DNA from: Pecten maximus
Lineage: Eukaryota
Length of the DNA: 64,000 nt
Direction: 5' to 3'
NCBI RefSeq assembly: GCF_902652985.1
Contig: NC_047024.1
Coordinates: 29,140,001-29,204,000, forward strand
Positions 22,563 to 53,167 of this stretch are shown here, in pieces. The number at the start of each line of letters is the position of its first letter. Positions within the stretch are counted from its first letter, which is position 1. The notes beneath the pieces are model-generated. The model saw only the letters and a list, made by a program, of their open reading frames with translations. It was not told the origin of the DNA and searched no databases. A program made the position numbers and the translations under genes.

Positions 22563-23822
22563 TTAGTATCCACGGAATGTAAAGAGGGCGATAAGGTTTT
22601 TGCTTACAACTAATATCACAAAAAAGACAAAGTGGAGCACATCACAAAAAGACGCAATCTGTTTCCATGTGACCGTCACTGATTTGCTGACGTCATCATG
22701 TGACACGTCCTTCCGACTTCCGGTATGATCCAAGTGTTGTATCTCAACGTTTTCCTCTTGAATGCTATTCTGTTTTTTCGTTAGGTTGCTTTTTAATTGG
22801 TCATTTCCATGGTCATCCCTCGAGTAGCCCTCGTTAAATATACACTTTTCCATATTAGAGTTGTTACTTTCACTTCTAGAGACTTTGCAACACCAACATA
22901 CCGCACAAGTTAAATACTGGAGCCACATGGGGACCTTGCTGTCTTCCGGTTTGTGGTAGAGTCGAAGACCAAGCATGGCACATATTGTTGCCAATGTACT
23001 TATAAGTAGATCCGCGAGCAAGAAGTAAGACATGCGCGGAATGCTGGGTTCTGTCGTGTTCGGCAAGTTGTCGGACACTATTGTGAGAAAGACCGTCAGA
23101 GCGAGCAGGACTGTAATTGAGAAACTGACGCGCTCTCCTGATTCTGCCGGAAGTAGAAACACCAGTGTTGTAAGTATCCCCAGCACGCTGGCGGGTATAA
23201 AGATGTTCACTAAAATAAACACTGGGCGACGTCTAAACGTAATCGTCACAGTAAATTGCTCATATTCTTTTATTGTTTCAATTGAAATATTCGTTTTCAT
23301 GAGCTCCCATTGACCACTTGGGAAAAAGATGGGCGATCCGAGATTGCCTGTCATTTTGTGCAGTGTCATTTCTTTGTGGGGGATATACATCCACGGATTG
23401 AAGATAAGTTGGCATGTGTGCTCGTCAAAAGGATAGTAGGTTATGTCTGCAGCACATGTGACCTCGTATACGTCACCAGGCCACCAGTGCATTGTGCCGT
23501 TCGCAAATACACGAATATTCAACCTCTCAAATCCGAGAGGGTGAATGTTGTTATATGAATTACCCAGAAGCAGTTCCGGTTTCCAGACGTCGTTCTGGGG
23601 AATCAGAAATGTTGAAATACCTCCATAATGACTTGGGTTCCACATCATGTTGAAGTCGCCCCATTGTATCGTAAATAGTCCAGTGATAGCCAGTTTATTG
23701 TCTTTCTCTACGAATTCCTTGATATTTACCAGTGTGAATCCTATCTCGACGTGAGTTGGCAGCGTCAAGTCATTCGTCGGTCGTATGTTCTTGTTGTAAC
23801 TGCTGGTCAAGTTCTTGTATAG
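22563..23822 (-). CDS. Intronless nAChR-like Cys-loop receptor subunit (gene 1), 5' end lost in the assembly gap
   Basis: YNKNIRP, WKPELLL, Cys-loop CAADITYYPFDEHTC (C-x13-C), RRRP before M1, LPAESGERVSFSITVLLAL, M3 and M4. The frame extends upstream as LYKNL to a TAA at the contig edge; the signal peptide is missing. Confidence 0.92.
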   Translation of the reverse strand, partial: LYKNLTSSYNKNIRPTNDLTLPTHVEIGFTLVNIKEFVEKDNKLAITGLFTIQWGDFNMMWNPSHYGGISTFLIPQNDVWKPELLLGNSYNNIHPLGFERLNIRVFANGTMHWWPGDVYEVTCAADITYYPFDEHTCQLIFNPWMYIPHKEMTLHKMTGNLGSPIFFPSGQWELMKTNISIETIKEYEQFTVTITFRRRPVFILVNIFIPASVLGILTTLVFLLPAESGERVSFSITVLLALTVFLTIVSDNLPNTTEPSIPRMSYFLLADLLISTLATICAMLGLRLYHKPEDSKVPMWLQYLTCAVCWCCKVSRSESNNSNMEKCIFNEGYSRDDHGNDQLKSNLTKKQNSIQEENVEIQHLDHTGSRKDVSHDDVSKSVTVTWKQIASFCDVLHFVFFVILVVSKNLIALFTFRGY

Positions 23823-23827
23823 TTATC

Positions 23828-23927
23828 NNNNNNNNNNNNNNNNNNNNNNNNNNNNNNNNNNNNNNNNNNNNNNNNNNNNNNNNNNNNNNNNNNNNNNNNN
23901 NNNNNNNNNNNNNNNNNNNNNNNNNNN
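23828..23927. other. Assembly gap (100 N)
   Basis: Run of exactly 100 N, a typical placeholder for a gap of unknown size. Confidence 0.99.
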
Positions 23928-28689: not shown

Positions 28690-28780
28690 AATATACTCGG
28701 TAATCTCGAATACTCTGGGTATCTCGACGGAGGTTTTCATGATGCCCCAATTACTTCGAGATAACAAAGTTCGTCTGTAC
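28690..28780. mobile_element. Fragment of a Tigger/pogo-like MITE end
   Basis: Repeated ATCTCGA motifs, ending TTCGAGATAACAAAGTTCGTCTG-TA. Confidence 0.35.
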
Positions 28781-29317: not shown

Positions 29318-30634
29318 ATGAAGATTTGGCTTCTAATCCTGTCTGTGTCAGTGACAACCATAAATGGCGCAACGCATGAAGACTTGACTAGACTTCACCA
29401 AATGTTGATGACAAATTATAGTAAGGACTTGCGTCCAACATTTAACTTGTCGCAGCCAACAACAGTATATGTCGGATTTCAGTTGATATCGTTGAAAGAA
29501 TTTGAGGAAAAGAAAAGCAAATTTGCTGTTGTTGGTATGTTAATGATGGCGTGGCATGACTTTCAAATGCAATGGAATCCTGATGATTATGGTGGTATAG
29601 ACCACACGTTTCTTCCTCAGAGCTCTGTATGGAAACCTAACTTTGTTATGTTGAACCCGTATGATAAAATTGAGCTTCCGGGTTTTGACAGCCTAAATAT
29701 CAATGTTAATCACTATGGGTCAATGGTGTGGGCTCCGCCTGATGTTTACGCTGTCACGTGCTCAGCGGATGTTACATATTATCCGTTTGATCAGCAGACA
29801 TGTTCCATATACTTTAGTCCCTACATGTATACTGTAACCGATGTGATTCTTCAGCCATTGTCACCTGATATTACCTTAGATTATTACTACCCAGACAGTC
29901 TTTGGGAGATAAAAGACACCAGTTGTACTGTGGTAACTGAAATGAACTCTCAAACACTGGCACTGACGATGGTACTTAAACGACGACCAATGTTTCAAGT
30001 TATAAACACAATAGTACCTTTCTGTATTTTGGGACTGTTGAACATCATGGTGTTTCTTCTTCCGGCCGAGTCTGGTGAACGTATTGGGTTTTCTGTGACC
30101 GTTCTGCTAGCTATTGCTGTGTTTATGACCATCGTGTCGGACACTCTGCCTGGAACCAGTGAACCTTCTTTCCCTCGATTGTGTTATTTATTGACAGCGG
30201 AACTCTGTACCAATATGCTTGTGACTATTTCTACAATCTCGGTATTACGGATGTATCATAAACCCAAGCATCAAAAGATTCCAACTTGGTTACAATCCGT
30301 AATTTGCAAATGTGTTTGCGCAAACGCCAAAAATAAAATTGAGAAAAGAAAAATATCAAACAATGAACAGAAAAATCGAATGACCGTTTCTATTGAATCG
30401 GTTCTATCCAAACTTCCTGAATCAGAAAAAGTGATGGCGGTAAGTGAAAGGAATGAGGAATGGAACAGCGATGTTACGGTTAAAGGGAACAGTGATATCC
30501 AAGAAAAAGAAAAACATATTTGTGGTAAAACGTCATGGCAGAGTGTTGCACAATACCTCGACATCTTTCTTTTTGTTTTATTCATAGTCATTTTTTCATC
30601 AAACAAAATCGTTGCTTATTATGTATTTTCGTAA
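29318..30634 (+). CDS. Intronless nAChR-like Cys-loop receptor subunit (gene A), 438 aa, intact
   Basis: Signal peptide MKIWLLILSVSVTTING, NYSKDLRP, WKPN, Cys-loop CSADVTYYPFDQQTC, four TM helices, ESGERIGFSVTVLLA. No vicinal Cys in loop C. Confidence 0.96.
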   Translation: MKIWLLILSVSVTTINGATHEDLTRLHQMLMTNYSKDLRPTFNLSQPTTVYVGFQLISLKEFEEKKSKFAVVGMLMMAWHDFQMQWNPDDYGGIDHTFLPQSSVWKPNFVMLNPYDKIELPGFDSLNINVNHYGSMVWAPPDVYAVTCSADVTYYPFDQQTCSIYFSPYMYTVTDVILQPLSPDITLDYYYPDSLWEIKDTSCTVVTEMNSQTLALTMVLKRRPMFQVINTIVPFCILGLLNIMVFLLPAESGERIGFSVTVLLAIAVFMTIVSDTLPGTSEPSFPRLCYLLTAELCTNMLVTISTISVLRMYHKPKHQKIPTWLQSVICKCVCANAKNKIEKRKISNNEQKNRMTVSIESVLSKLPESEKVMAVSERNEEWNSDVTVKGNSDIQEKEKHICGKTSWQSVAQYLDIFLFVLFIVIFSSNKIVAYYVFS

Positions 30635-35997: not shown

Positions 35998-37125
35998 GGA
36001 ACATGAGCTATAAATTTGTTTAGGCCATCACTGATTGTTCAATGGACACTTTCACTGAAATAACACACAAATGGACATGGCAGCCGTGTACGTGAATATA
36101 ATTTTTTTTCAGATTGATTTATACATATATTAAAACAGCAAGATTATTAAATGCACTCTTTTATTGGAACAAAAAAAGTACGTCTGGCTATCAATCTTGA
36201 AATATTTAATAAAATTCATAACTTGTACATTTTATTGTCTTAAATTATAATAAAGTACAAGTTATTGAACCCGGATTCACCTGCACAAATGCTAAAACAT
36301 ACAGTTTAGAATAGAATAGCAATCGATATAGATGCTAGATAAAAATTTGATACTGTCAAGAAAAACTAAAGAAATTAAGAACTCCAATGGTTATAAAAAA
36401 CAGTATTGACATAAATCGACGATGTCACCTTTCTTTTTTCCTCTCTTTTGATTCTTAAAGTATAACTACTCAATGCAGAATTAATAAATTGATGGAATTC
36501 CGGAAATCTCTCATGTCAAAAATTTACATTTCCTGCTTAAGATTAATTGATGTTCGACGAATGTTGTTAATAGTCTTTCACACTTTCACACGTAAAAATA
36601 TATACAGGTCTTAAATATGCAAGACGTGACTACATACATCACGTGGTGCTTAACTAGATATATAGATCTAATCTATTTACTTACATTCTAATTATAAAAA
36701 AAACTCTTCAGCATATTCTCTTCTTTCTACGAAATCTACTGATATTGAACATGAAAGACGTCTTACCGTCAATAATGATGTATTGGTCCATTAGCTCTTT
36801 CCTTGTGATCATTTCCACATTTCGCTTATTAACAAGAATGACAAAAAAAATAAAGGAATATTCTCGGATTCAAATAATAAACTCGAAAACTGTATGCTTT
36901 TTTTTTTTTTTTTTTTAGCCTTAATTGGAATCACCCGGATATCAACATCCGATAAAGTAGAGTTTAGTGCTTGCAATTGTAAATTTACTGATAGACGATA
37001 CAACAACTGTCACGATATACATAGGTTCTCATCTGTTCAAGCACATGTTTCTGCAAAACATGGTTTGGCTATAGCAACTAAAGAACAGTATGTGTGTATT
37101 TACAGTGAAGACGAAAAAAAAAGTT

Positions 37126-38430
37126 TTATGTAAATATAAAATAAGCAGCTATTTTACTTGATCCGAAAATTAATATGAACAAAACAAAGAAAAATACATC
37201 GAGAAATTTTGCCACATCCTGCCATGATGTTTCACAATAAATGTGCTTTCTTTTTGTTTGCATCATTCCGTTTCCATTGCAGTTGCATTTGTGATCCCTC
37301 TTGTTTTCTATCTCGGCACCATCGAATTCCTGAATTTTAGTCACAGCTGTTTCATTACGGATATTGTTTTCTCTGTTCAGATGTTTGTTGTTTTCCTCGA
37401 TTTGCTTTTCGGTTTCTTTAATGTTGCCCCAAAAACTTTTACAAATGATATATGTCAACCAAGATGGAATCTTCTGGTGCTGGGGTTTATGATGCAGTCT
37501 TAATACTAAAATAGTACAAATTGTCACAAGCATATTGATACCAAGTTCTGCTATCAAGAGATAACATAATCGAGGGAAAGAAGGCTCACTGGTTCCAGGC
37601 AGAGTGTCCGCCACGATAGTCATAAACACAGCAATAGCTAGCAGAACGGTAACGGAAAATCCAACACGTTCACCGGACTCAGCCGGAAGAAGAAACACCA
37701 TGATGTTCAACAGGCCCAAAATACAGAAAGGTACAATTGTGTTTATAACTTGAAACATTGGTCGTCGCTGGAAGACCATAGTCAGTGACAGTGTCTGGGA
37801 AGCCATGATAGTTGAGACATGAGTATTAGCAACTTTCATTTCCCATAGAGTGTTTGGTGTATAATAATACATGTCAATTTCGGAACGTTCTGGTTCCAAA
37901 AACACTTCAAACACTGAATACATGTACATACTGAAATAAAATGAACACGTTTGTTGATCGAACGGATAGTATGTGACGTCAGCTGGACACGTAATGTCAT
38001 ACACATCTAGAGGGGACCAGAATACATATCCCTCTTTACTTACAAGGACTTTCAGCTTGTCAAAGCCTTGAGGTTCAATTTTCTCAAATGGATTCAAAAG
38101 TAAAATATCTGGCTTCCACACCTCATTCTGTGAAAACATCATACGATCAATGCCACCAAAGTCATCAGGGTTCCATTCCAATTGAAAGTCATGCCAGAAC
38201 ATTGCAAAGAATCCAACAATAGAAAATTTGCTCTTCTTTTCTTCGAATTCCTTCAATGAGAGAAGATAAAATCCGATATTCACTTTTGTTGGCTCCGAGA
38301 GATTCAAGGTTGGGCGGAATTTCGTGCTGTAATTCGTCATCAAGTGTTGATGTAGTCTTGTCAGATCTCCATGCATTGCTCCGTATATCGTTGTGAATGA
38401 CATTGAGAGAAAAACTAGTAACGGCACCAT
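37126..38430 (-). CDS. Intronless nAChR-like Cys-loop receptor subunit (gene B), 434 aa, intact
   Basis: Signal peptide, WKPDILLLNP, Cys-loop CPADVTYYPFDQQTC, ESGERVGFSVTVLLA, four TM helices. Confidence 0.96.
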   Translation of the reverse strand: MVPLLVFLSMSFTTIYGAMHGDLTRLHQHLMTNYSTKFRPTLNLSEPTKVNIGFYLLSLKEFEEKKSKFSIVGFFAMFWHDFQLEWNPDDFGGIDRMMFSQNEVWKPDILLLNPFEKIEPQGFDKLKVLVSKEGYVFWSPLDVYDITCPADVTYYPFDQQTCSFYFSMYMYSVFEVFLEPERSEIDMYYYTPNTLWEMKVANTHVSTIMASQTLSLTMVFQRRPMFQVINTIVPFCILGLLNIMVFLLPAESGERVGFSVTVLLAIAVFMTIVADTLPGTSEPSFPRLCYLLIAELGINMLVTICTILVLRLHHKPQHQKIPSWLTYIICKSFWGNIKETEKQIEENNKHLNRENNIRNETAVTKIQEFDGAEIENKRDHKCNCNGNGMMQTKRKHIYCETSWQDVAKFLDVFFFVLFILIFGSSKIAAYFIFT

Positions 38431-39400
38431 GCTTTCCTGTGTCGTTTGGGTATATCAAACAGTAGCATAACCTGTTTCATAAAAACATTACTAATCAATA
38501 TGATTCTGAGCTACATTGGATATTTTGTATGTTTTGTTATTGGCCAACAAGCACAAGACAATTCCCTCGCTTTATGAGATCGATAAACAACATAATGCCG
38601 CTTTCACACTCACTTTTAATGGGTAATCTATGTTTAATAGGAAACATATATTCTCTCACACTTAACAGGTTCCCATTTGCCTTTTATTCTGAAAAAATCA
38701 TGACTAACAGGTGATGAAGTTATCACTTTATACGCCATGATTATATCACAATCAAGTCATGTTCATGACATATCATATTACGGCCTACATCACGTACAAT
38801 ATCTAACAGAAAATTGTCAGAGAGAAATAATATATGTTAAATCAAAAACTTAAAGCGTTACAAAATACGATACAACATCAAACAAACAAAACCCATGTCT
38901 AGTTTAAAACAAAAACGTGGCGATGGTTACTCAAATTTTGTGAAACAGACCAACAGTTTTTAGATACTTCAAAATTTTGTATACTTGTGTAATGTAGATA
39001 CGACATCTAACGACAAGAACAACATACGATATATGTTTGTTTTACGAAAGGAGGAGTGCCATTTTGGGCCTTCTGGGGGCTATCAATTGTACGTTTTATT
39101 ATATATATATTATATATATATACATAGAAACCTTGAGGTAAGATGGTATGACACTAAATTAAGGTCAGAGATCATTTCATGAGGGGTAAAATTGATGGTC
39201 AATTTTCCGACTATATTAATATATATACTATTTTGTGCCTTACAACACTTAAGAATAATATATTAATCAGCCTGATATAGCACATCCAACTGCCTTATTA
39301 ATAGGGTATCTCACTTGAGTGAATGATGCAATGATGACTGAGTACTGGTCAAAGTCTGAAAGTGACAGTGAATGAAGGTCACGCATTCTTACTTGTCGTT

Positions 39401-39530
39401 GGGGACGCGGGGCCGAGTGGTTAAGGTGCCCCGACACTTTATCACTGGGTTACGAGTTCGAAACCTACGTGGGGCAGTTGCCATGTGATGACCGCAGGCC
39501 GGTGGTTTTTCTCCGGGTACTCAGGCTCCT
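39401..39530 (+). mobile_element. tRNA-derived SINE (V-SINE-like), 5' part
   Basis: A box GGCCGAGTGG, B box GAGTTCGAAAC, followed by the V-domain-like GGTGGTTTTTCTCCGGGTACTC. Paralogous to 61254-61428. Confidence 0.75.
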
Positions 39531-40934
39531 GAGGGTGTCCTTTTGATCTTGTATTTGCCCCTTAATGACTGAAATTGTGTAGGGGCCATACAATATTACA
39601 ATACAAGTGCACACTATGAACGTGTATGAATGGCTCGTTTAAATGCCTTCATTCCCAATTGTTTCATGAAAATGACATCAATTATACTTCATGCAAAGAA
39701 ACTTGTTCAATTCTGTTGCATTCCTTTCTTTCCAAATCGATTCATTCAGATAGAATTCAGATAAGAGGTACATTCTTTCAAATGGTTCCATTAAAGATGA
39801 AAAGTTTTATTACTCAGAACTAGTAAATGTATCGATTTCCATTAATACCATTAAACTATGTATTAGATAGTCTTTTGAAATATATGCTTCATGGCTGCAA
39901 TACAAACAGGGTGTAATCCCTTTTTAAATTGTAGTACGTTCAAATCGGATATATTTTAAAGCCAACAAAAGACAGCAGATGCTGTAATTGCATGGTAAGT
40001 ACTTGGTGTATAACTAGTATTTACTTGTCGTAACTATCGTTGAATCCTTGTGTATCAATAATATTGTCGAAATTGTGTCCATTGTCTTCGTTTTGTTAGA
40101 TCAATATACCAAGTATACTGTAATTCAAACCATTTCAGTCGATTTGTTGGATTTTGTTGTCACAAATTTCACATAGAGCGACCCAAGAGCCATGAATCGC
40201 TGAGGTTAAATACGTATTTGAGACTTGTGATCTTGAAATTGTCCAAATTCATTTCACTTGAACGAACTTGGTAGCCCTGTGTCTCAGCTAGCCACTTAGG
40301 TAATATGACCGTGGATTCCCAGCATGCTACTGAACCAAAATGAAGATCTTAGTCTTTTTTCTTACTAGTAAATGGTTTAAATACGTACAAATAAATGCGA
40401 TACACTTGTTCAACTCTCTTAGAAACTGGAGAAACGTGCTGTCAATTCTTCTCTTTATACACGTACCGTTGATGAAGTATTCAGTGTGGCTAATCAGGTA
40501 CTCTTGGAAGATTTATAGAGCAAGTGTTAATGGCCATGCTTCGGTATTGGAACTCTTCGGTGTTTTAGATATCGAAGTCGGAACATTTAGAAATGAGGAA
40601 ACGTTGATACACGAATGCGATTAGTCGTATTAATCAAAATACAAAAATGTAATTATTTACAGATGATTTCCAAAGGCATAGGGTATCGTGCAGAACATTT
40701 TCTGTTGTACATACAAGTTTGTAGATTTAACACTTTGGTAAAACAACCGTCCTACTCGTTGCCCTGACAGCTGATCCAAGCTAGGATGACAAAGTGCAAG
40801 TTGAAATTTTAAGATTTTACATTCCTACCTCGTATTGATTGATGTTGTTTTATCATATCTGATCACTTTAAACATAGGAAAACTAACAAAAACACTGAAA
40901 AACACAGAATTAGGCCTTTGTGTCAGACTGTAGA

Positions 40935-41440
40935 TACAGCATGGCCGACAGGTGGCCAACTTGTATTTTGACAATTGAAGTTTGTTATCGCTATTCCTCA
41001 AAAAGCATTAAAAGAATCTTCCTCAAATTTCATATGTAGGTTTCCCTTGATCTCTAAGCATATTCCGGTATATGACCAACCTGTCAACAACATGGCAAAC
41101 ACACAGCCATCTAGGATTTTGACAATGAGAACTTTATCAGCGATGCCTTAAAGTACAAAATGGCTATCTTGGGTCTTACATTTTAGTGTGGTGGCTCCAC
41201 GTGGTCTCCAGCTGTGCGGTCTGATTAAAAGAACTAGTATACTAAACAGATGGTTGACAAATAGCATAATCTTTCTGGATTTTGACAGTTGTGGGTTGCT
41301 CGTGCAATAAAATGTAAAATAAAGTTAATAAATGTTTTAAAAGAAGAGTGATTGAAGGGGAAAGAAGAGAAATGGTCAGTCTTTCATTTGACTGTAAGGA
41401 TCATTCAATGGTGGGTGCCACTCTGGGGTCTCTTGTTTTT
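40935..41440. repeat. Decayed repeat with three ~155-bp internal units (Helentron/HINE-like)
   Basis: ATGG...GCCA(A/T)CT...ATTTTGACA(A/G)T recurs at ~40941, ~41092 and ~41251. Confidence 0.4.
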
Positions 41441-42460
41441 GTTGAAGCCCTCGCCACTATCTGGGTCATACTGATTCCAAGTTTTGTTATACTGCATACT
41501 GAACAGGTTACAACACCGTAACACTAAATTCCATATTTGTCTTTTTCGTCGTTCTTCAAATATATTGATTGCTGTAATGTATAGAATAAAGGAGCCAAAG
41601 CATGCGTAGCTGGCAATGCATCTGAATGAAATTGCCACGCGTGAAACTTAATGTGGCTTGTAATGAATTTGACAAAAAAACCTTCAAAAAGAATTATCTG
41701 AATGTCAGTACTGCAAGGTGACACGCATCGAAATAAACATCACACACAAAATAACACATCAATAGGAGTTTAATGTTTATTAATTTGCAAAAAAAAAGCA
41801 CTGGTGTCTAACAATAAGTAAAAGTGATTTTTTCCTAAAATATGTACATTTGTAGCTTGCGAAGAAAACAAATGTGGTAATGTTCACGTTATAGGGAAAA
41901 GCGCCGAGATGACATGTCCTCGCACGTCTCCTAAATGGTCATTCTTGCATCACATATTCTTTATTACTAAAGCGGGAGGATCAGATTTAGCACATAGCAT
42001 GCGACGAACTATTAACGATGAAACACATTTTGTTTGGCTGCATTGAACTACAAACAATACAAGATACAAATCATAACAACGGTAATATCTATATTTGTGA
42101 CTATCAACATTAAGATTATTTGAAATATCTTAACTTATTTTAAAAAAAATCTTATCTAATCATTGTCTCTTTGTTTTACTGTACGCTGCATGTGGTCTTG
42201 TTGATACCTTGTCCGTTTATAAATGACAGTAGCTGTGAACGTTAAAACGATACCCAACCAACCAACCTTGTCTTCTGGCGTTTGCGTGATATTGTTCGAG
42301 TATATTTATATTGGCTTTTACCTTTTTGTTGTTTTTGATATTTCATTTTTACATACATGATCAACAATTTATTGAACAAAGGAATAAAATTAACGATGTA
42401 ATTGGTTCCTTAATAGTAAAATATCCCCTTGCGTGTCACTATATTCTATATTCTGTGTGG

Positions 42461-42585
42461 TGGTCGGGTGGCACAGTGGTAACACACTTGCCTTTCACCA
42501 GGACGGCCATGGTTTAACTACCAGATCACGTCCTGCCAAAGTAAGACCCCTCGCGCGCTTCAATCCGGGCCAACATGCGTGATAT
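42461..42585 (+). mobile_element. Decayed tRNA-derived SINE head
   Basis: A-box-like GGTGGCACAGTGGTAACACACTTGCCTTTCACC followed by a degenerate B box. It does not fold as a complete tRNA. Confidence 0.45.
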
Positions 42586-42853
42586 ATATAAGTTGATATA
42601 AAATATCCACAAAATAAGCAGTGTGAAATAATTTTTACTCTTCATCAAGGAATGACACGACAGATCGTTGCCCTAAGCACTGATTAACATAATAACATAA
42701 TATTAAGGATTACCCCTGCGTCAATATGTCGAACACTCCAAGCTGACAATTTAAATCGAAAGTTAATTGACACGTAAAAATTGTCTTGCAGTATCAATAC
42801 TTTATTCGATATTGCCCAGCATCCAACTATTCCAGCATCCATGTATGTATATC

Positions 42854-44132
42854 TTACATAAATATAAGATAAGCGGCTAACTTGCTTGTTCCAAAAACGG
42901 CTATGAATAAAACAAAGAAAAAGACGTCGAGAAATTTCGCCACATCCTGCCAGGATGTTTCCATCTGTCCATTTTCATTGCAGTTGCATTCGGAATCCGT
43001 CATGCTTCCTGTCTCGATTCTATCTGATTCAAGAATTGTAGACACCGTTGTTTCCGAACAAATACGGTTTTGTTTACTTAGAATTGTGTTGGTGTTACTT
43101 TTCTTTTTGCGTTCGTTTTTTGTTTTAGCTTTGACACAAACTCTTTTACATATGATATATTTCAACCAAGACGGAATCTTCTCTTGCGGGGGTTTATGAT
43201 ACAGTCTTAATACTAATATAGTACAAATTGTCACAAGCATATTGGTACAGAGTTCTGCCATCAAGAGATAACATAATCGAGGGAAAGAAGGCTCACTGGT
43301 TCCAGGCAGAGTGTCCGACACGATAGTCATAAACACAGCAATAGCTAGCAAAACTGTCACGGAAAATCCAACACGTTCACCGGACTCGGCCGGAAGAAGA
43401 AACACCATGATGTTCAACAGTCCCAAAATACAGAAAGGTACGATGGTGTTAATAACTTGAAACATTGGTCGTCGTTTAAGTACCACCGTCAGTTCCAGTG
43501 TTTGGGTATCTGCTAGTGTGAAGACTCTACTTCTTGCAGATATCATCTCCCAAAGACTGTTTGGATAATAGAAATCCAAATCAATTGCAGATGAGCTCGT
43601 TTCAATAAACACATCGAATAACGTATACATGTACATGCTGAAGAAGAATGAGCATGTTTGCTGATCAAACGGATAGTATGTAATATCAGCTGGACACGTG
43701 ATTTGATATACATTTGGAGGGCCCCAGAATGTGGATCCGTCATTATCCACAGCGATCTTAAGACTGTCAAAGCCGGGAGGTTCAACATTATCAAATGGAT
43801 TCAATAGTAAGAGATCTGGTTTCCATATGGTTTTCTGTGAAACAAATATACGATCAATGCCACCAAAGTCATTAGGATTCCATTCCAGCTGACAGTCATG
43901 CCAAGTCATTACAGATATTCCATTAATGGAAAATTTGCCTGTCTTTTCTTCGAATTCCTTCATTGAGAGAATAAAAAAATCCAACATTCACTTTTGTAGG
44001 CTCCGATAGATTTAACGTAGGGCGTAATTCCGTGCTATAATTCGTCATCAAGTGTTGGTGTAGTCTTGCCAAATCCCCCTGCATTGCTCCGTATATGGTT
44101 GGCACCAAGAGAAAGAATAGCAACGACATCAT
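42854..44132 (-). pseudogene. Intronless nAChR-like subunit (gene C) with a +1 frameshift in a T7 run (pseudogene or sequencing error)
   Basis: ORF 43923-44132 carries the signal peptide and NYSTELRP; ORF 42854-43987 carries the rest. Removing one T from GGA-TTTTTTT-ATT (A run 43973-43979) restores GFFILSMKEFEEK, collinear with gene B GFYLLSLKEFEEK. Confidence 0.9.
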
Positions 44133-44669
44133 GATTACCTGTACCGTGCTGGTATGTCGGAATCAGTAGCACTACTTGCTTAAATGGAACATTATCAATC
44201 AATATAAAAACAGAGGATGTTATATCATTGGGGAAAACGTAGCAGATAACGCATTGACATTGTTAAACAGATTGAGAGAAATTGTAAAGCCTTCAGCATC
44301 AAAGAAATGAACCGCTACATAAGCATTTCCCCTGTACAAATAAATACCCTGTCGCTATGTATATATACATATATACTGAAACGAAAAAGAAACGCAACAT
44401 GGAAAATTGTGATTAATTTTGTATTAAATATACATATCTGTATAAAAATCGCGGAAATAAACATGCACCCTGCCTAACACCCATACCAATCTTCAAAATC
44501 ACCCAAGTGTGACTAGAGACCTATGCACTTCCGGCGCGGTAAAAACATCAAAAACCGTGCCTGTACAAACATATGCGTTCTTTTTTCATTCAAACCAGTA
44601 TCAATTCATCACTAACATTGAGCCACATCATCGCCAATACTTTTGCAAACAATAATTCCTTTTACAATT

Positions 44670-45551
44670 ATGCCACGGTTATCAAAGGTTGATAGAGGAC
44701 GTGCTATAGCGATGCTTCTGGCAGGGAACACGCAACTTCACGTCGCTCGACAATTCAGAGTTCACAAATCGACTATTAGTCGATTAGTTTCACGTCTTAA
44801 CGCAACAGGAAGAGTCGATGACCAGCCGAGATCAGGACGTCCACGCGTAACGTCGCGACGTCAAGACCGGGTTCTTAGGTTGGCACACCTGCGTAACAGG
44901 AGATTAACGGCCGCTGAAACGGCAAGGAATACGATTGGTAATCATAACCGTCGAATTCATCCCCAAACAGTGATCAACAGACTGTGTGAGGCTAATTTGC
45001 GTGCAAGGCGACAGTACGTTGGTTTACCACTAACACCGCAACGTCGAGCACGTCGTATGCAATGGGCAACGGCACATATGCCCAGACGTTTTCCTATGAG
45101 ACGTTGGAGGTCTATGCTCTTCACCGATGAATCTCGATTCACGTTATTTCGAGCAGATGGCCGTCAACGTGTGTACCGGCGTCGAGGCGAACGTTTTGCT
45201 GACGCCTGTGTTTTGGAACACGACCGATTTGGGGGTGGATCAGTTATGGTTTGGGCGGGAATCTCCCATGGTTTGAAGACGCCTTTGGTGATAGTCAATG
45301 GGAATTTAACGGCCGTACGCTATCGGGATGAGATCCTTAGGCCCCATGTTGTGCCGTTTGTTAGGCAGCATCATCTAACCTTTCAGCAAGATAACGCGAG
45401 ACCACACGTTGCAAGAGTCTGTAGAGACTTTCTTGCGACACAGAACATTGTTCCTATAGATTGGCCTCCATATAGCCCCGACCTGTCCCCATCAAATTGT
45501 AGGTTTAATAAAATAATACTTGTGAGCATTATGTTTAAATTTCATATGTAA
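44670..45551 (+). CDS. C-terminally truncated Tc1 transposase (lacks catalytic Glu)
   Basis: MPRLSK... with paired-like HTH, GRPR, FTDESRF, QQDNARPH and WPPYSPDLSP. It then switches at 45492 to an unrelated 19-aa tail (SNCRFNK...). Confidence 0.9.
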   Translation: MPRLSKVDRGRAIAMLLAGNTQLHVARQFRVHKSTISRLVSRLNATGRVDDQPRSGRPRVTSRRQDRVLRLAHLRNRRLTAAETARNTIGNHNRRIHPQTVINRLCEANLRARRQYVGLPLTPQRRARRMQWATAHMPRRFPMRRWRSMLFTDESRFTLFRADGRQRVYRRRGERFADACVLEHDRFGGGSVMVWAGISHGLKTPLVIVNGNLTAVRYRDEILRPHVVPFVRQHHLTFQQDNARPHVARVCRDFLATQNIVPIDWPPYSPDLSPSNCRFNKIILVSIMFKFHM

Positions 45552-45689
45552 TAGTTAATATTGAATATTGATGTAACATCCTTTAAATGTTTAGAGATTT
45601 TTAAGAACAGGTCACTTTGCTAGAAGGTCATGATTGGTAGTACCCTACGTGAATCCAAGTTGAAATGGCAGCAGTTTTGAAACCGTGCC

Positions 45690-46709
45690 CTAATATCGTG
45701 TGTGTCCTCCTCGAACAGTTATCACATCTCTAATTCTTTGTTGCATTGAGTTCATCAGGGCATTGACTTTCCGTATTGGAATGTTATTCCATTCTTGGAC
45801 GAGTACATTTGCTAACTGAGGGAGGGTATTTGGGGGGTTACGGCGATTTCGAATTCTTCTGTCTAATTCATCCCACAAATGCTCGATTGGGGACAGGTCG
45901 GGGCTATATGGAGGCCAATCTATAGGAACAATGTTCTGTGTCGCAAGAAAGTCTCTACAGACTCTTGCAACGTGTGGTCTCGCGTGATCTTGCTGAAAGG
46001 TTAGATGATGCTGCCTAACAAACGGCACAACATGGGGCCTAAGGATCTCATCCCGATAGCGTACGGCCGTTAAATTCCCATTGACTATCACCAAAGGCGT
46101 CTTCAAACCATGGGAGATTCCCGCCCAAACCATAACTGATCCACCCCCAAATCGGTCGTGTTCCAAAACACAGGCGTCAGCAAAACGTTCGCCTCGACGC
46201 CGGTACACACGTTGACGGCCATCTGCTCGAAACAACGTGAATCGAGATTCATCGGTGAAGAGCATAGACCTCCAACGTCTCATAGGAAAACGTCTGGGCA
46301 TATGTGCCGTTGCCCATTGCATACGACGTGCTCGACGTTGCGGTGTTAGTGGTAAACCAACGTACTGTCGCCTTGCACGCAAATTAGCCTCACGCAGTCT
46401 GTTGATCACTGTTTGGGGATGAATTCGACGGTTATGATTACCAATCGTATTCCTTGCCGTTTCAGCGGCCGTTAATCTCCTGTTACGCAGGTGTGCCAAC
46501 CTAAGAACCCGGTCTTGACGTCGCGACGTTACGCGTGGACGTCTTGATCTCGGCTGGTCATCGACTCTTCCTGTTGCGTTAAGACGTGAAACTAATCGAC
46601 TAATAGTCGATTTGTGAACTCTGAATTGTCGAGCGACGTGAAGTTGCGTGTTCCCTGCCAGAAGCATCGCTATAGCACGTCCTCTATCAACCTTTGATAA
46701 CCGTGGCAT
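45690..46709 (-). CDS. Full-length Tc1 transposase (339 aa from first ATG), DD34E
   Basis: FTDESRF ... QQDHARPH ... SPDLSPIEHLW, with 34 residues between the second D and the E. C-terminus RGGHTRY is typical of Tc1. Confidence 0.95.
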   Translation of the reverse strand: MPRLSKVDRGRAIAMLLAGNTQLHVARQFRVHKSTISRLVSRLNATGRVDDQPRSRRPRVTSRRQDRVLRLAHLRNRRLTAAETARNTIGNHNRRIHPQTVINRLREANLRARRQYVGLPLTPQRRARRMQWATAHMPRRFPMRRWRSMLFTDESRFTLFRADGRQRVYRRRGERFADACVLEHDRFGGGSVMVWAGISHGLKTPLVIVNGNLTAVRYRDEILRPHVVPFVRQHHLTFQQDHARPHVARVCRDFLATQNIVPIDWPPYSPDLSPIEHLWDELDRRIRNRRNPPNTLPQLANVLVQEWNNIPIRKVNALMNSMQQRIRDVITVRGGHTRY

Positions 46710-49679
46710 AATTGTAAAAGGAATTATTGTTTGCAAAAGTATTGGCGATAATGTGGCTCAATGTTAGTGATGAATTGATACTGGTTTGAATGAAAAAAGA
46801 ACGCATATGTTTGTACAGGCACGGTTTTTGATGTTTTTACCGCGCCGGAAGTGCATAGGTCTCTAGTCACACTTGGGTGATTTTGAAGATTGGTATGGGT
46901 GTTAGGCAGGGTGCATGTTTATTTCCGCGATTTTTATACAGATATGTATATTTAATACAAAATTAATCACAATTTTCCATGTTGCGTTTCTTTTTCGTTT
47001 CAGTATATAATATAGTAGAATTAACACTCAAAGTCTCCGTAAAGAGATGCTAGTACTGTCGTCGGATTATGTATTGATATGTGGTGGATTATTAACTTCT
47101 TCAAAAATGAAAAGTATTCTCCTCATTAAAATAAAAAAAATATTTGTTGTCAGACCCACCTTTCCGGTACTCTGTAAGCGAAGTTGCCGACCGCCATCTT
47201 TTTAAATACCTTATTGGTAGGATACCACAGAGTCCTAAAAGTGTTTCAGCATAAAGCACATTGAAATTATAAGATTATTTTATTCAACGTATGTATGGTT
47301 GCCATTATTCAAATTATTACTGCAGTTAAATCAATAAGATGATGACTTGTTCAATCAATCTTAATACACGACCATGCCCCATGTTTGATGACATGTAACA
47401 TACCGTCCATGGATGTGAGTATCATTGTAGCGAAATGTTCGTTATTTTTGTACCGAACATTTCATCTTTTCATTCGGATGATTTAGAAGTAGATAGTCAG
47501 CATTTTTGTGTATGACATGGACTATTTCTGTCATTATCGTTAAACCGTAAAACAGATTCCAGTAGACATATTTCGTGTTGTTCAGTTTGTGATGTACATG
47601 TATTTGTTTGAATTCTATATCTAATGGGGTTTTTTTGTTTGTTTGTTTTTGTTTTTGTTTTGTTTTTTTCGAAACCTCCATTTACTTTATGTCTCTAATA
47701 GTTTTGAGCGTTATACAATGAGTATAAAACTAAGGTTTCGAGATGTTTCCATTATGATAAGTTCATGTATTAAACGGTATTCACATTTTCTATGTTAATG
47801 ATTTTCTATATAAGCAATACACCTCTAAAAATCAGTAACGTACATTCCAAAGGGATATGTTTCACGAATGAGTATGTAACAAAATATATATACTACAATA
47901 TTAACATGAATTATTCACTTTAAGGACGGAAAATGGACAAATCTCGAGCAGAAATCCAAAATCCATATAGCGAAAGATTGAATGCAATGATGCGGAAGGG
48001 TACATTAAAAATAAGGGGATCGAAAAACTATGTTCCCCCAGACCACTTTTCTTCTGTTACGCAAATAAACGGGGCTTGAAGCAAAATGTGGCATGGAAAA
48101 GACCAAGGAAACAAAAAGAAAAAATATGAAACTGAATCGATCACTACGGAAGACGATGTTGTCAGAGGAAATAGAAACAACGCTAACATGGAAAGGGCAC
48201 CTGACCCTACAGAGCGTTTTGTACAAACGCCTTTGTAAAAGCTGGAAGACGGAAAAGGATAAGTCGGGCACTATCGAAAAATCCAAGAGAATATATGAAG
48301 CCCAAGGAAAACCAAATATAAAACGGCACAGCGGAAGTTGCAGCGGTGCAAAAGAAAACTAAATCGCCTATTACTTCTAGTAAAGTAGATACGCAACTTA
48401 GGAAAGCTTGAATCAGTAGAGAACATGGCAGGAAGGTAAGAAAGCAGCTTCTGATGTTACATGTCCTGACAAGAGAAATAAAATCAGCAAAGGAAGGGAA
48501 TAACGTGGCTAAACAAAGGATATTACTTACTGTCATTGCTGGTAAAGTTATCAAGATATACAGGTGTGCTGTAGATATGATGAAAAGAGTAAGTGAAGAC
48601 AGACGACAATAATATGCCCCTTTGCATTGGGAGTTCTGACTATCTTTATATAGGTCGATAAATAGTAAATTCGTCAAACTTCGGAATGCGTATGTGTAAT
48701 GCGATTTTGTAAGTAACAATAATAACCGTCAAGAATATGTCTATTTGGCAAAATTGACAAGGAGAAGCTGTAATTCTAATTTATGAAGAGACCCCATGTT
48801 CATATGAAAAGCTAATAATAAGCATTGCTAATTCTAAAATCATATAGCCGCAAGAAAAACAACATATAATCTGCCGTTTTTCATTTACAAAAGTCGACTT
48901 GTCCATTGTAAAAATAGGATTGCCAGGGAAATTTTCGTTGTAATGGAGAAAGGCGAAACGTGAAAATTTGCTCCGAATGGTCAAAATGTTTGAAATAACA
49001 ATGCAATATTCTGCCTCATTTATGGATGAAAAAGATAACTGAAATATCGCTGCGGTCCATGTTCTATATAAAAAATAAAGATAGTATATGGAGCGCAACA
49101 AAAATCTTTCCTTACCCGACCTACTTTCTATCGCGTCAGAATAGAGACCCCCGTGATGAGTGGCGAATCGCAATTAATTACGATTTCGATCGTTACAGAA
49201 AATGGCGGTATTTTTTATTCCCTTGCGTTCCTTATTGCTGTTAACCTTTTATTGTTTTGTTAATTGAATATTATTAGGTACCATAATCGTAATTTTTCAA
49301 ATGCTTTTATCTGTAAAATCTATTATCATAGATTTAATACCGCCTTATGTGAATCCCATCATGCTTGCTACACTATCGTTATCAGAATTGGCTTGATATT
49401 CTGTCGGAGATTAGTGTGAAGGAAGAACATATATATTCATTCTACATTACACACGTGTCCAATCGAAACTACAAACTGAGTACACAAAACTACTGTACGT
49501 GAAGAGATAAGTTGCTAATGGATTCGATAAACGTAATGGAATGGTAAACAAGTTTGTTATAGGATTTGTGAGTAATAGCCGTATTCTCTTCAGTCGAAAC
49601 ATTAAAAAGAATGTCAATCAATTTGGAAGCATAAACTGGTTGAGTGTTCTATAAATAGATTAAGGTTATCATATGGCGA

Positions 49680-50035: not shown

Positions 50036-50438
50036 CAACCTACTTGCATGGGGTCAACCTAAGGACAAATTCCGTGGAAACGTCATGTTTGGCATCTTCT
50101 CTGGGTCATTATTCTGACAGTGGATTAAGCCAGTCACCTACTGCTGCGTCAAGCAGGGTGCATTAGGTACAATGTTAATGACACTTCGTACAGAACGTAT
50201 CACTTCAAACGGATGAAAGTTCAGATTAAAAATGAGACAGTATCAAGCGAGGCTACAAGAGCGCAAAGAAATATAATCATGAGTGCAGAAAGATTTTACA
50301 TAGCTCACAGTTCTGAGTGATTTCACCGTTTTCTTTTATGCATGTGGCATTAGATAGAGCCTATGAATAAGGTCAGAAAAAAATATCGTAGAAGCCGGTT
50401 AATCACGGCCACCTGTATCTGGGTTCCATTTCTACTAT

Positions 50439-50535
50439 GCATTTTGGGAGTTGGACTGCTGGATTTGCCCGTTGTCAGTATAGTGTGACCGGGTGGAGTG
50501 TCCAGTTGGGTGTCTTTGGCAGTATGCTTCAGTAA
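50439..50535 (+). mobile_element. Decayed SINE core fragment
   Basis: GGGAGTTGGACTGCTGGATTTGCCCGTTGTCAGTATAGTGTGACCGGGTGG...GGCAGTATGCTTCAGT. Confidence 0.65.
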
Positions 50536-51871
50536 AAATCATGTTGCAGTCTTCATGTTTAGTCTTTTTCCACGTAACATTGAGTTAACGTATTACTAAA
50601 TCCGTGCAAGAGCGGGAAAAGAATATGCCTGTTGTATCTTATTCGAAGTTGTAAGAGGCAATTTATTGTGGGGCCCCCGTAAGGTTGGGATGATTTCACC
50701 TTTGTTTTATGTTCAAGGGACATTGGAGAACCCAAAAATAATGGATAATAGTGGATGTCCTCCATCGTATTCTATTTTGAAGACCGAGATAATATTTTGT
50801 CCCCATAACAACACTTGAGATCTTAAAATTATCCTTTCCTTCCTTGCTGATTCAGTTTCGCGCTATCGCAAGAGAAAAACATAAACATACTGCAGCCTCC
50901 CAAAACACACATACATACAATATACGCATCTATCTCGCATACAGAGGAGATTGTGCTTAAATGACCTTAGCTGTTGATAGTATGTTAAACAATACAAAAC
51001 CAAAGTCTCACTGCTCTGTCTACTTTTTTTGTACTCCAGGCGCTTCCTGACACCCGTTCTAATATGACCCTGGTTGTTGCGAGCAAAAAAAATCTCGTTG
51101 ACTACATGAATCAATGCACCGGCTTAAGCATGAACCATAAATCACCTGTTCCAGAAAGTGCAATTTCCACATCAATTAATTTTGCAATTCAAGATGCATA
51201 TCTTTTTCGTGTTTGGCATTGATAAGATTAAGTTATTCAATTGTTTGTTTAAGTTGGTATATAATTCGTCAAGTAATTGTATTTTTTTTTTTTTTTTTTT
51301 TACCACATCTGAAAAAAATAGTTTCTCTCTTGTGCTGAACATCTAAAACATCTTTAGTCCTGTGATAAAGGACCGGGAACCATTTGCTCTACTAGAATAT
51401 ATAAACAACGGAATTTACTTTGTACGGTACATATGTTTTGATAAGATATAGAGGACAGACTATTTGATGCATACTTTAATAGGAGTTTTAATCTAAAATC
51501 ACAATTGTTTTACTTTTTGAGCGTGATATTTTGGACAGAATGAAAAGAAAATGTGAAAAGCGAGAAATTTACGTTGTGAACCTTGGAAACCACACATTCA
51601 TAATGTTTAAGAGAACAAAATACGGGCTCGTTTTTATACCCAATGATATATCCTTTTCGGGTTCAATATAGTTTCATCTGCAGCGTTAGAAAATCGCTTG
51701 GGCATTTGTGTAGGAAGATTGACCTCTTTAAATCGATCTCCTAAAGTGAAGGCATTACCTATATAAGTCACTTCTGTCACGTGATCTTGTTTTGAACCAT
51801 ATCGATTAATATTGCTCCATTTAAACAGGTAGTGATATCGGTTCTGACATAGCTGAACGATAGAGGCGAAC

Positions 51872-53167
51872 ATGATGCCATTACTATTCATTCTCTCAGT
51901 GTCACTGACAACCATATTCGGGACAATGCATGGAAATTTAACTAAACTACATCGGCACCTGATGGCAAATTATAGTCCAGAATTCCGTCCTGCGTTAAAC
52001 CTCTCAGAACCAACAACGGTGAATATCAAGTTTTATCCATTCTCGTTGAAGGAGTTCGAAGAAAAGACCAGCAAGCTTTCTATAGTTGGAGTATTTGTAA
52101 TCGAGTGGCATGACTTTCAGTTGAAATGGAACCCGGATGAGTTTGGTGACCTAAATCGTATGCTGATTTCACAAAACACTTTATGGAAACCAGATATCTT
52201 ACTAATGAATCCGTTCGAGAAAATTGAACCTCCAGGCTTTGACAGGCTAAAGATCCTTGTTCTTAATGATGGATCCGTATCCTGGGCCCCTCCAGATGTC
52301 TTTGAGGTCTCGTGTGCAGCTGATATCACATATTATCCATTTGATCAGCATACATGTTTATTTCATTTTAGCATTTACATGTATAACATATTCGAGGTGT
52401 TGATAAAACCAGACTACTATGAGATAACTTTGGATTATTATTCACCAAACAGTCTTTGGAAAATGAAATTTGCAAGTAGTCGTGTACTCACACACACTGA
52501 CTCCCAGATACTGGTACTGAAGATGATTTTCCAGCGACGACCAATGTTTCAAGTTATCAATACAATATTACCGTTCTGTTTTTTGGGGTTTTTGAATATC
52601 ATGGTATTTCTTCTTCCGACTGAGTCCGGTGAACGTGTTGGATTTTCCGTTACCGTTCTGCTAGCTATTGCTGTGTTTATGACTATCGTGGCTGACACTC
52701 TGCCTGGAACCAGTGAGCCTTCATTCCCTCGATTGTGTTATCTTTTGGTGGCAGAGCTTGGTATCAATATGCTTGTGACGATTTGTACTATATTAGTGTT
52801 AAGACTGCATCATAAACCCCAGCACCAGAAGATTCCATCTTGGTTGGCGTACATTATAGGTAAAAGTGTTCGTTGTAACGCTAAAATGGGAAAAGGACAC
52901 AAACTAGATCTCATAAATGAAAGCAGCATTTGTCTTGAAACCACCGTGTCAACGATTTCAGAATCGGGAAAAGGAAACAAAAAGGACCTCGAATTGAACA
53001 TCGATTTAACTCCCAGTGGAAACGGTGTGACACAAACTCAAAGAAAACATGTTTGCTGCAAAACGTCATGGCAGGATGTCGCAAAATTTCTCGATTTATT
53101 TTTCTTTATTTTGTTCATGATATTTTTCGGAACAAGCAAGATAGCCGCGTATTTTGCATTTGCATAA
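51872..53167 (+). CDS. Intronless nAChR-like Cys-loop receptor subunit (gene D), 431 aa, intact
   Basis: Signal peptide, WKPDILLMNP, Cys-loop CAADITYYPFDQHTC, ESGERVGFSVTVLLA, four TM helices. Confidence 0.96.
   Translation: MMPLLFILSVSLTTIFGTMHGNLTKLHRHLMANYSPEFRPALNLSEPTTVNIKFYPFSLKEFEEKTSKLSIVGVFVIEWHDFQLKWNPDEFGDLNRMLISQNTLWKPDILLMNPFEKIEPPGFDRLKILVLNDGSVSWAPPDVFEVSCAADITYYPFDQHTCLFHFSIYMYNIFEVLIKPDYYEITLDYYSPNSLWKMKFASSRVLTHTDSQILVLKMIFQRRPMFQVINTILPFCFLGFLNIMVFLLPTESGERVGFSVTVLLAIAVFMTIVADTLPGTSEPSFPRLCYLLVAELGINMLVTICTILVLRLHHKPQHQKIPSWLAYIIGKSVRCNAKMGKGHKLDLINESSICLETTVSTISESGKGNKKDLELNIDLTPSGNGVTQTQRKHVCCKTSWQDVAKFLDLFFFILFMIFFGTSKIAAYFAFA

What the first reader, a model, noticed from the sequence alone, without database searches (positions are those of the whole stretch)
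22563..53167. Tandem cluster of intronless Cys-loop channels that have lost the acetylcholine site: a candidate bivalve chemosensory receptor family
Seen: all five genes keep C-x13-C and four TM helices but lack the loop C vicinal CC and have a short, variable loop C (VVTEMNSQ, STIMASQ, FTLADTQ, LTHTDSQ, ETIKEYE). The loop A Tyr is lost (WKPDILLLN), the loop B Trp is replaced by Tyr in A-D (SPYMY, SMYMY, SIYMY), and loop D is hydrophobic and differs in each gene (GMLMMA, GFFAMF, GISVMT, GVFVIE, GLFTIQ). Known: those residues form the ACh aromatic box; cephalopod chemotactile receptors are intronless, clustered nAChR derivatives that lost them and sense hydrophobic compounds; intronless nAChR expansions are reported in bivalves but are largely orphan. 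Inference: this is a parallel non-cholinergic sensory repertoire.
Basis: partly seen in the sequence, partly recalled or inferred. Interest (0 to 1): 0.8.

Follow-up and report, generated by a model that had tools for sequence, protein, structure and literature searches.

The report
Scallop orphan nicotinic-like channel array
This is a tandem array of five intron-free, nicotinic-receptor-like cation-channel genes in the king scallop that lack the usual acetylcholine-binding residues; it is one more case of a gene expansion already described in bivalves, and nothing found here shows that the channels are sensory.

Summary
Two caveats apply. Gene E runs into the N gap with an in-frame TAA 2 nt from it. 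Gene C has a 1-nt frameshift in a T7 run, but contigs from two of three DNA samples have one letter fewer there, which opens the frame.

The missing acetylcholine box is not special to this cluster. All 120 nearest bivalve relatives and 20 further P. maximus paralogues lack the vicinal Cys pair, the loop A Tyr and the loop D Trp. All keep a cation-type pore (-1' Glu, 9' Leu). The genome holds at least 97 such single-ORF genes in many arrays, as Jiao et al. 2019 described for bivalves. Only Trp-to-Tyr in loop B marks the A-D clade.

The genes are constrained (LBD dN/dS 0.10-0.36). Pocket loops vary more than the rest of the LBD, but dN/dS stays at or below about 1. Sequence identity is higher to vertebrate nAChR subunits (27%) than to cephalopod CRs (21-23%). 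Seventeen RNA-type runs of the species hold almost none of the B-C stretch.

A sensory role is therefore untested. The scan noted two similar arrays elsewhere in this genome, and one follow-up reached the same verdict.

The parts
22563..23825 (-). Gene E. A nAChR-like subunit of a different subfamily that keeps the loop B Trp. The ORF is open from 23822 down to the stop at 22563. An in-frame TAA lies at 23823-23825, and the N-terminus is lost in the gap.
23828..23927 (.). Assembly gap (100 N). The 28 N-terminal residues of the database product P0019 are encoded nowhere else in the window, so continuity and frame across the gap cannot be established.
29318..30634 (+). Gene A. A complete single-ORF subunit of 438 aa, running from signal peptide to M4.
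37126..38430 (-). Gene B. A complete single-ORF subunit of 434 aa. The AlphaFold2 model (pLDDT 85.6) has the nAChR subunit fold.
42854..44132 (-). Gene C. The subunit is split in the window by a 1-nt frameshift. Codons 1-53 are in one frame and the remaining ~372 codons in the next.
43973..43979 (-). T7 run (minus strand) that carries gene C's frameshift. Contigs of DNA runs X1 and X5 have one letter fewer here, while X4 has seven.
51872..53167 (+). Gene D. A complete single-ORF subunit of 431 aa.

Best explanation
The five genes are a local sample of the large, already described bivalve expansion of intron-poor, tandemly duplicated nAChR-like genes. Seven genes form the array if the two just upstream of the window are counted.

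Each gene encodes a subunit of a pentameric, cation-selective ligand-gated channel. The gating machinery and the pore are intact. The orthosteric pocket at the subunit interface no longer has the canonical acetylcholine aromatic box.

The likely mechanism is inferred, not shown. A small molecule other than acetylcholine in its canonical binding mode binds at the remodelled pocket, which differs between paralogues. That binding opens a pore that is nearly identical in A-D.

The array evolves by tandem duplication with birth and death of copies. The LBD diverges. The M1-M3 pore module is kept alike by purifying selection and probably by gene conversion between neighbours. Whether the ligand is environmental or internal is not known.
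For: Shown here:
- Domains, Cys-loop and four TM helices are present.
- The fold is that of a nAChR subunit, Z 30-31.
- The -1' Glu and 9' Leu are invariant, and 20' is Asp or Glu in 113 of 120 relatives.
- The pre-M1 Arg, the Cys-loop Pro and Asp, and the M2-M3 Pro are invariant in 73 relatives.
- The box residues are absent in all 120 relatives and in 20 other P. maximus paralogues.
- At least 97 single-ORF paralogues lie in many arrays in this genome, two of them directly upstream of the window. All 20 that were fetched have complete ORFs.
- A scallop-only clade contains subclades shared by Pecten, Argopecten and Ylistrum.
- dN/dS is 0.10-0.36 in the LBD and 0.09-0.16 in M1-M3.
- winA and its nearest Argopecten relative are as alike in the pocket loops (0.68) as in the rest of the LBD (0.62).
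- Synonymous divergence drops from 0.45-0.77 in the LBD to 0.16-0.37 in M1-M3, significant in 5 of 6 pairs. A's TMD is closest to its neighbours B and C, while its LBD is closest to Argopecten proteins.

Literature: PMC6896357 describes the same phenomenon in bivalves.
Against: - No transcript of B or C was seen in 17 RNA-type runs of the species, so expression is unproven.
- Ligand gating itself is inferred from conserved residues only.
- A Tyr at the loop B position and other nearby aromatics could still bind a quaternary amine, so insensitivity to ACh or choline is not shown.
- The drop in dS could in part reflect constraint on the nucleotide sequence rather than conversion. However, E against L001/L002 shows no such drop.
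Confidence: 0.75

Rival explanations
1. The subunits form environmental chemoreceptors in mantle edge, tentacles, gill or larvae, a bivalve parallel to the cephalopod chemotactile receptors. Each paralogue's pocket would be tuned to a different, perhaps hydrophobic, compound.
For: - The genes are intron-poor, clustered, box-less nAChR derivatives, as CRs are said to be (PMC11526382).
- The pocket loops are more variable than the rest of the LBD (entropy 1.43 against 1.04, p=0.0024). Eighteen of the 25 most variable LBD sites lie in the loops. Alternate, pocket-facing positions of loops D and E are the hot spots.
- pN/pS on 17 a priori contact codons is 0.6-1.3, against 0.27-0.41 elsewhere.
- Copies are born and lost between scallop genera.
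Against: - There is no expression evidence at all.
- There is no clear dN above dS. Recent duplicates in other arrays show purifying selection in the loops as well.
- The same features hold for all 120 relatives and for 20 sampled paralogues among at least 97 in this genome, so they cannot by themselves mark a sensory subset.
- Jiao et al. report varied, non-sensory expression for such genes, in gill, gonad, embryo and stress or immune responses (PMC6896357).
- There is no special kinship with CRs.
Confidence: 0.17
2. The subunits are accessory (structural) partners in heteromeric receptors. Binding sites would be supplied by canonical alpha-type subunits encoded elsewhere, so the channels would still be cholinergic, and the variable pocket would simply be unused.
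For: - All copies are non-alpha, with no Cys pair.
- The pore and gating elements are strictly conserved while contact positions evolve near neutrality, pN/pS 0.6-1.3.
- Among the solved structures shown with E-values of 1e-46 to 1e-47, muscle beta subunits (Torpedo, bovine, human) rank just below alpha7.
Against: - The loop D Trp, which complementary-face subunits normally keep, is also lost in all copies.
- winA and its Argopecten relative conserve the pocket loops as well as the scaffold, which argues for a used pocket in at least that lineage.
- More than 97 accessory subunits in one genome would be hard to explain.
Confidence: 0.2
3. The genes are silent or decaying duplicates with no function.
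For: - No RNA was found.
- The reference carries a frameshift in C.
- Jiao et al. found more intron-poor than intron-rich nAChR genes with no or low expression (PMC6896357).
Against: - A, B and D have complete ORFs, and C is open in two of three samples.
- dN/dS is 0.10-0.36 in the LBD and about 0.1 in M1-M3.
- Pore residues are invariant across three scallop genera and 120 relatives.
Confidence: 0.06

Closest known systems
Bivalve or lophotrochozoan expansion of intron-poor, tandemly arrayed nAChR genes (Jiao et al. 2019, BMC Genomics 20:937, PMC6896357)
   Same: The genes have single-exon coding regions, lie in tandem arrays and form lineage-specific clades. Most copies are non-alpha, with the principal ACh-binding residues not conserved.
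   Different: Nothing differs in kind. New here are the details of one scallop subfamily: Trp-to-Tyr in loop B throughout the A-D clade, and a local drop in synonymous divergence across M1-M3. P. maximus sequences were already included in a published family tree (PMC10338036).
Cephalopod chemotactile receptors (CRT1, CRB1; van Giesen 2020, Allard 2023 and Kang 2023, as summarised in PMC11526382)
   Same: Both are nAChR-derived, intronless, clustered cation channels without the ACh-binding residues, and the binding pocket is the variable part.
   Different: - They are not the same clade. B shares 21-23% identity with CRB1 and CRT1, against 27% with vertebrate nAChR subunits, and its nearest relatives are scallop-only.
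- No sensory expression and no ligand are known.
- No dN/dS above 1 was shown.
- A preprint reports a 'CR-like' clade that includes bivalves (PMC13174522). Whether these genes fall in it could not be tested.
Alpo4, an orphan nAChR-like receptor of Alvinella pompejana (PMC10338036; PDB 8bx5)
   Same: Both are lophotrochozoan nAChR-like subunits without the loop C Cys pair and with no known agonist. The folds are similar (Z 26.2, 21% identity).
   Different: Alpo4 keeps the aromatic residues of loops A-D, according to the paper. The scallop genes have lost the loop A Tyr, both loop C Tyr and the loop D Trp.
Human alpha7 nAChR and muscle beta subunits
   Same: These are the best sequence and fold matches (E about 1e-49 to 1e-51; Z 30-31). 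The Cys-loop, cation pore and gating elements are shared.
   Different: The scallop genes have no vicinal Cys pair, a loop C that is 5 residues shorter, and four of the five box aromatics replaced. Their coding sequence is also intron-free.

Membership tests
Cys-loop pentameric ligand-gated ion channel, cationic nAChR/5-HT3 branch | Neur_chan_LBD plus Neur_chan_memb domains, a C-x13-C loop and four TM helices | tested here: met
   Pfam hits for all five genes; Cys1 and Cys2 invariant; AF2 model with M1-M4; nAChR fold at Z 30-31
Cys-loop pentameric ligand-gated ion channel, cationic nAChR/5-HT3 branch | Cation-type M2: -1' Glu, 9' Leu and an acidic 20' residue | tested here: met
   -1' Glu and 9' Leu in 120 of 120 relatives and in all five genes; 20' is Asp in all five
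Alpha-type, ACh-binding nAChR subunit | Vicinal Cys pair at the tip of loop C | tested here: not met
   0 of 120 relatives, including the five genes, have CC in loop C; loop C is 5 residues shorter than in alpha7
Canonical acetylcholine site (principal plus complementary face) | Aromatic box: loop A Tyr, loop B Trp, two loop C Tyr and loop D Trp | tested here: not met
   Aligned to alpha7: Y93 to L/L/L/M/G; W149 to Y in A-D (W kept in E); Y188 deleted; Y195 to S/S/T/S (Y in E by the MAFFT alignment); W55 to M/F/I/V/L
Bivalve intron-poor nAChR expansion (Jiao et al. 2019) | Coding region without introns | tested here: met
   A, B and D run from signal peptide to M4 in one ORF. C does so apart from a 1-nt run-length difference that is absent from two samples. 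E is undecidable at its 5' end because of the gap. UTR introns were not testable, as no RNA was found.
Bivalve intron-poor nAChR expansion (Jiao et al. 2019) | Tandem arrays and lineage-specific clades | tested here: met
   Seven genes lie within about 73 kb on C10, and many other arrays exist. The clade is scallop-only, SH-aLRT 98.
Cephalopod chemotactile receptors | Membership of the cephalopod CR clade | tested here: inconclusive
   No tree including CR sequences could be built, because none could be fetched. Identity to CRB1 (21%) and CRT1 (23%) is lower than to vertebrate nAChR subunits (27%), and the nearest relatives are scallop-only. Both points argue against membership.
Cephalopod chemotactile receptors | Expression in peripheral sensory cells | tested here: inconclusive
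   Seventeen RNA-type runs of the species hold about 0 of the words of 36800-44200. Run X8 covers only repeats. Tissue labels are coded, and Logan contigs drop rare transcripts.
Cephalopod chemotactile receptors | Gated by poorly soluble or hydrophobic compounds and not by ACh | not testable with these tools
   This needs electrophysiology.
Cephalopod chemotactile receptors | Diversifying selection on pocket residues | tested here: inconclusive
   dN/dS in the loops is 0.34-0.52, against 0.16-0.28 elsewhere in the LBD. pN/pS on 17 contact codons is 0.6-1.3. The values are raised but not clearly above 1.

The most novel reading that the evidence does not exclude
The scallop A-D subfamily, and by extension many box-less bivalve nAChR-like arrays, would be a true peripheral chemoreceptor repertoire that arose independently of the cephalopod CRs. 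A shared pore module would be homogenised by gene conversion. The ligand-binding domains would diversify at the pocket-facing positions of loops C, D, E and F.
Probability: 0.15. Interest if true: 0.7.

Novelty: new member of a known kind. Interest (0 to 1): 0.3.

Why it matters
Bivalves carry a hundred or more orphan nicotinic-like channels, and nobody knows what gates them. If some proved to be environmental chemoreceptors, they would be a second, independent conversion of a neurotransmitter receptor into a sensory receptor within molluscs. They would also supply a receptor family for bivalve chemosensation, which is poorly characterised.

This window does not bring that question closer to an answer than the published surveys do. 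It offers three well-defined, intact candidates (A, B, D) for expression and oocyte work. It also gives a testable picture of modular evolution, with a conserved pore and a diverging pocket.

Tried and rejected
Only paralogues of the same genome could be used, and dS is saturated for A against B-D and for E against all.
2. A tree with cephalopod CRs. I used structure-based identity from pdb_via_wide instead.
3. Expression. The single run search, on B plus C, found no RNA holder, and laying one RNA-type run gave only repeat hits.
4. The idea that the cluster is unusual in lacking the ACh box was rejected. The loss is shared by all 120 nearest relatives and by 20 other paralogues.
5. The idea that C is a dead pseudogene was rejected as a fixed state. 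An open-frame run length is present in two of three samples.
6. A general within-species homogenisation of the TMD across scallops was not seen. Mean identity is 0.853 both within and between species. The conversion signal is confined to the Pecten neighbours.
7. The careful IQ-TREE search did not finish in time, so the quick tree (SH-aLRT only) is reported.
8. The N gap was not filled and no other copy of its letters was looked up.
Full report
**What is in the window**

The window is G000:C10:29140001-29204000 of a 918-Mb assembly. Other proteins on the same 44.8-Mb contig are labelled Pecten maximus.

Between 22.5 and 53.2 kb there are five ORFs of 377-438 aa. Each carries Neur_chan_LBD (E 1e-35 to 1e-45) and Neur_chan_memb:
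- E: 22563-23810, minus strand
- A: 29318-30634, plus strand
- B: 37126-38430, minus strand
- C: 42854-43987, minus strand
- D: 51872-53167, plus strand

tblastn with A and E finds no other copies or fragments in the window. A, B and D run from a signal peptide to M4 in one open frame.

**The gap, tested first**

On the minus strand E's frame is open up to 23822. An in-frame TAA lies at 23823-23825, two bases from the gap at 23828-23927.

The database product of this gene (P0019, 447 aa) has 28 further N-terminal residues, including a signal peptide. No 6-mer of them is encoded anywhere in the window. E's start therefore lies in, or is disturbed by, the unread stretch. Neither continuity, frame, nor the intron status of its 5' end can be decided.

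**Gene C**

The first 53 codons, from the ATG at 44132, are in a different frame from the remaining ~372 codons. The shift is one extra base in a run of seven T at 43973-43979 on the minus strand.

I laid Logan contigs of three DNA samples on 38150-44150:
- X1 (sample S1, possibly the assembly's own source) has one letter fewer at 43973.
- X5 (S3) also has one letter fewer.
- X4 (S2) has the window's seven.

One base fewer joins the two frames. The break is therefore an assembly error or a segregating allele, not a fixed pseudogene.

A HMMER alignment of B to human alpha7, extended to the other genes by MAFFT, gives these correspondences:

| alpha7 position | Loop | A | B | C | D | E |
|---|---|---|---|---|---|---|
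| Y93 | A | L | L | L | M | G |
| W149 | B | Y | Y | Y | Y | W |
| Y151 | B | Y | Y | Y | Y | Y |
| W55 | D | M | F | I | V | L |
| Y195 | C | S | S | T | S | Y |

Loop C is five residues shorter than in alpha7, and Y188 and the Cys pair are missing.

The channel part is canonical. The -1' Glu, 9' Leu and 20' Asp are present. The pre-M1 Arg, the Cys-loop Pro and Asp, and the M2-M3 Pro are invariant in a 73-sequence alignment.

An AlphaFold2 model of B (pLDDT 85.6) matches nAChR subunits best. Foldseek gives E about 1e-34, and VIA-align gives Z 30-31 at 27% identity.

**How special is it?**

It is not special. In the 120 nearest relatives found by the protein search (scallops, oysters, mussels, clams, unionids), none has the Cys pair, none has Tyr at the loop A position, and none has Trp at the loop D position. 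All 120 have -1' Glu and 9' Leu.

A six-frame search of the window's own genome gave at least 97 matches at E of 1e-30 or lower. Nearly all have open frames of 400 aa or more without stops, and they sit in many tandem arrays on most chromosomes. Two lie 10 and 20 kb upstream of the window.

I fetched 20 of them. All have complete single ORFs of 406-480 aa. All lack the Cys pair, the loop A Tyr and the loop D Trp, and all keep the cation pore.

This is the phenomenon described by Jiao et al. 2019 (PMC6896357):
- 99-217 nAChR genes in bivalves.
- Many are intronless and in tandem arrays.
- Only 33 of 132 oyster genes are alpha-type, and only 13 of those have the principal site fully conserved.
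- Expression varies by stage and organ.
- More intron-poor genes are silent.

P. maximus sequences were already included in a lophotrochozoan nAChR tree (PMC10338036). A 2026 preprint reports a 'CR-like' clade that includes bivalves and notes pocket substitutions in several clades (PMC13174522). Only Trp-to-Tyr or Phe in loop B is particular to the A-D clade, in 15 of its 15 members.

**Family history**

A quick IQ-TREE of 54 sequences gives a scallop-only clade of 28 (SH-aLRT 98). It has four subclades:
- An E-type, with one copy each in Pecten, Ylistrum and Mizuhopecten.
- The type of the two upstream neighbours.
- A third type seen in Argopecten and Ylistrum.
- The A-D clade (15 rows, support 100).

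Within the A-D clade, A groups with Argopecten and Ylistrum proteins, and B, C and D group with other Argopecten proteins. The A versus B/C/D split therefore predates these genera, and later duplications are lineage-specific. E is 39% identical to A and is a neighbour, not a member of the same subfamily.

**Selection**

All estimates use Nei-Gojobori counts on codon alignments.

- dN/dS is 0.10-0.36 in the LBD and 0.09-0.16 in M1-M3 among A-D. The genes are constrained.
- The six binding loops have dN/dS of 0.34-0.52, against 0.16-0.28 for the rest of the LBD, in the pairs with unsaturated dS.
- Seventeen contact codons chosen a priori give pN/pS of 0.6-1.3, against 0.27-0.41 elsewhere.
- In the 15-member clade the loops have higher entropy (1.43 against 1.04, p=0.0024). 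Eighteen of the 25 most variable LBD sites lie in the loops.
- There is a clear alternation at pocket-facing positions of loop D (74, 76, 78) and loop E (129, 131, 135, 137).
- winA and its nearest Argopecten relative are as similar in the loops (0.68) as elsewhere (0.62). B-type pairs are much less similar at contact positions.
- Recent duplicates in other arrays show no excess of non-synonymous change in the loops.

The pocket is thus the fastest-evolving part of the LBD. The data fit relaxed constraint as well as they fit diversifying selection.

**A side result: the pore module**

Among A-D the proportion of synonymous differences falls from 0.45-0.77 in the LBD to 0.16-0.37 in M1-M3. Fisher p ranges from 1e-10 to 4e-3 in five of six pairs. 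Identical nucleotide tracts reach 58-73 nt there.

E against the upstream neighbours shows no such drop. A's TMD is most like that of C and B, while its LBD is most like Argopecten proteins.

I read this as gene conversion of the pore module between neighbours.

**Relation to cephalopod CRs**

In an all-against-representatives structural search, B's model aligns to squid CRB1 (8eiz, Z 24.4, 21% identity) and octopus CRT1 (9e6b, Z 23.2, 23% identity). These matches are weaker than those to vertebrate nAChR subunits (27% identity).

A proper tree with CR sequences could not be made.

**Expression**

Seventeen RNA or RNA-guessed runs of the same species, from eight studies, hold next to none of the stretch's words.

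One of them (X8), laid on 38150-44150, covers only high-copy repeats. This is weak negative evidence, for three reasons. Contigs drop rare transcripts, tissue labels are coded, and A, D and E were not searched.

**Verdict**

The sequence observation is right. The genes most likely encode working subunits of cation channels that do not bind acetylcholine in the canonical way.

They are an ordinary sample of a known bivalve expansion. The scan has noted two similar arrays elsewhere in this genome, and one follow-up reached the same conclusion.

The chemosensory reading remains a reasonable but untested hypothesis. The accessory-subunit and internal-ligand readings are at least as likely.

Noticed in passing
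window 44370-47009: Two Tc1/mariner transposase copies (DDE_3, HTH_Tnp_Tc3_2) lie head to head between genes C and D. They form an inverted repeat with 1122-nt arms (44370-45491 and 45888-47009) that are 100% complementary and 396 nt apart. One ORF is complete (348 aa); the other ends early (302 aa).
   Followed up: partly
window, M1-M3 codons of A-D (B codons ~226-300: 37531-37755 on the minus strand, and the homologous parts of A, C and D): Synonymous divergence among A-D drops 2- to 4-fold in the pore module relative to the LBD, with identical tracts of up to 73 nt. A's TMD is closest to its neighbours, while its LBD is closest to Argopecten proteins. This suggests gene conversion of the pore module within the array.
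   Followed up: partly
G000:C10:29120509-29121549 and 29130275-29131489 (L001, L002), just upstream of the window: Two further single-ORF paralogues (480 and 417 aa, dS about 0.09 between them) extend the array to seven genes. They keep the loop B Trp but lack the rest of the box.
   Followed up: yes
window 39411-39500, 40964-41164, 42458-42582: Short, very high-copy repeats, with summed contig depth of 1e4-1e5 in all DNA runs and also present in the RNA-type run. Loose ends next to 42499 carry a tRNA-like GGTTCGATTCC motif, which suggests a tRNA-derived SINE.
   Followed up: no
window 43973-43979: The run length differs between samples, 7 against 6 T on the minus strand. This decides whether gene C is in frame. 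The window's own count is the broken one.
   Followed up: yes
window 58870-60197 (+): Three consecutive ORFs of 124-154 aa give only weak, sub-threshold or very short Pfam hits (PHD_P300, HTH_60, Chromo_MIT1). They may be remains of a mobile element or a low-complexity artefact.
   Followed up: partly
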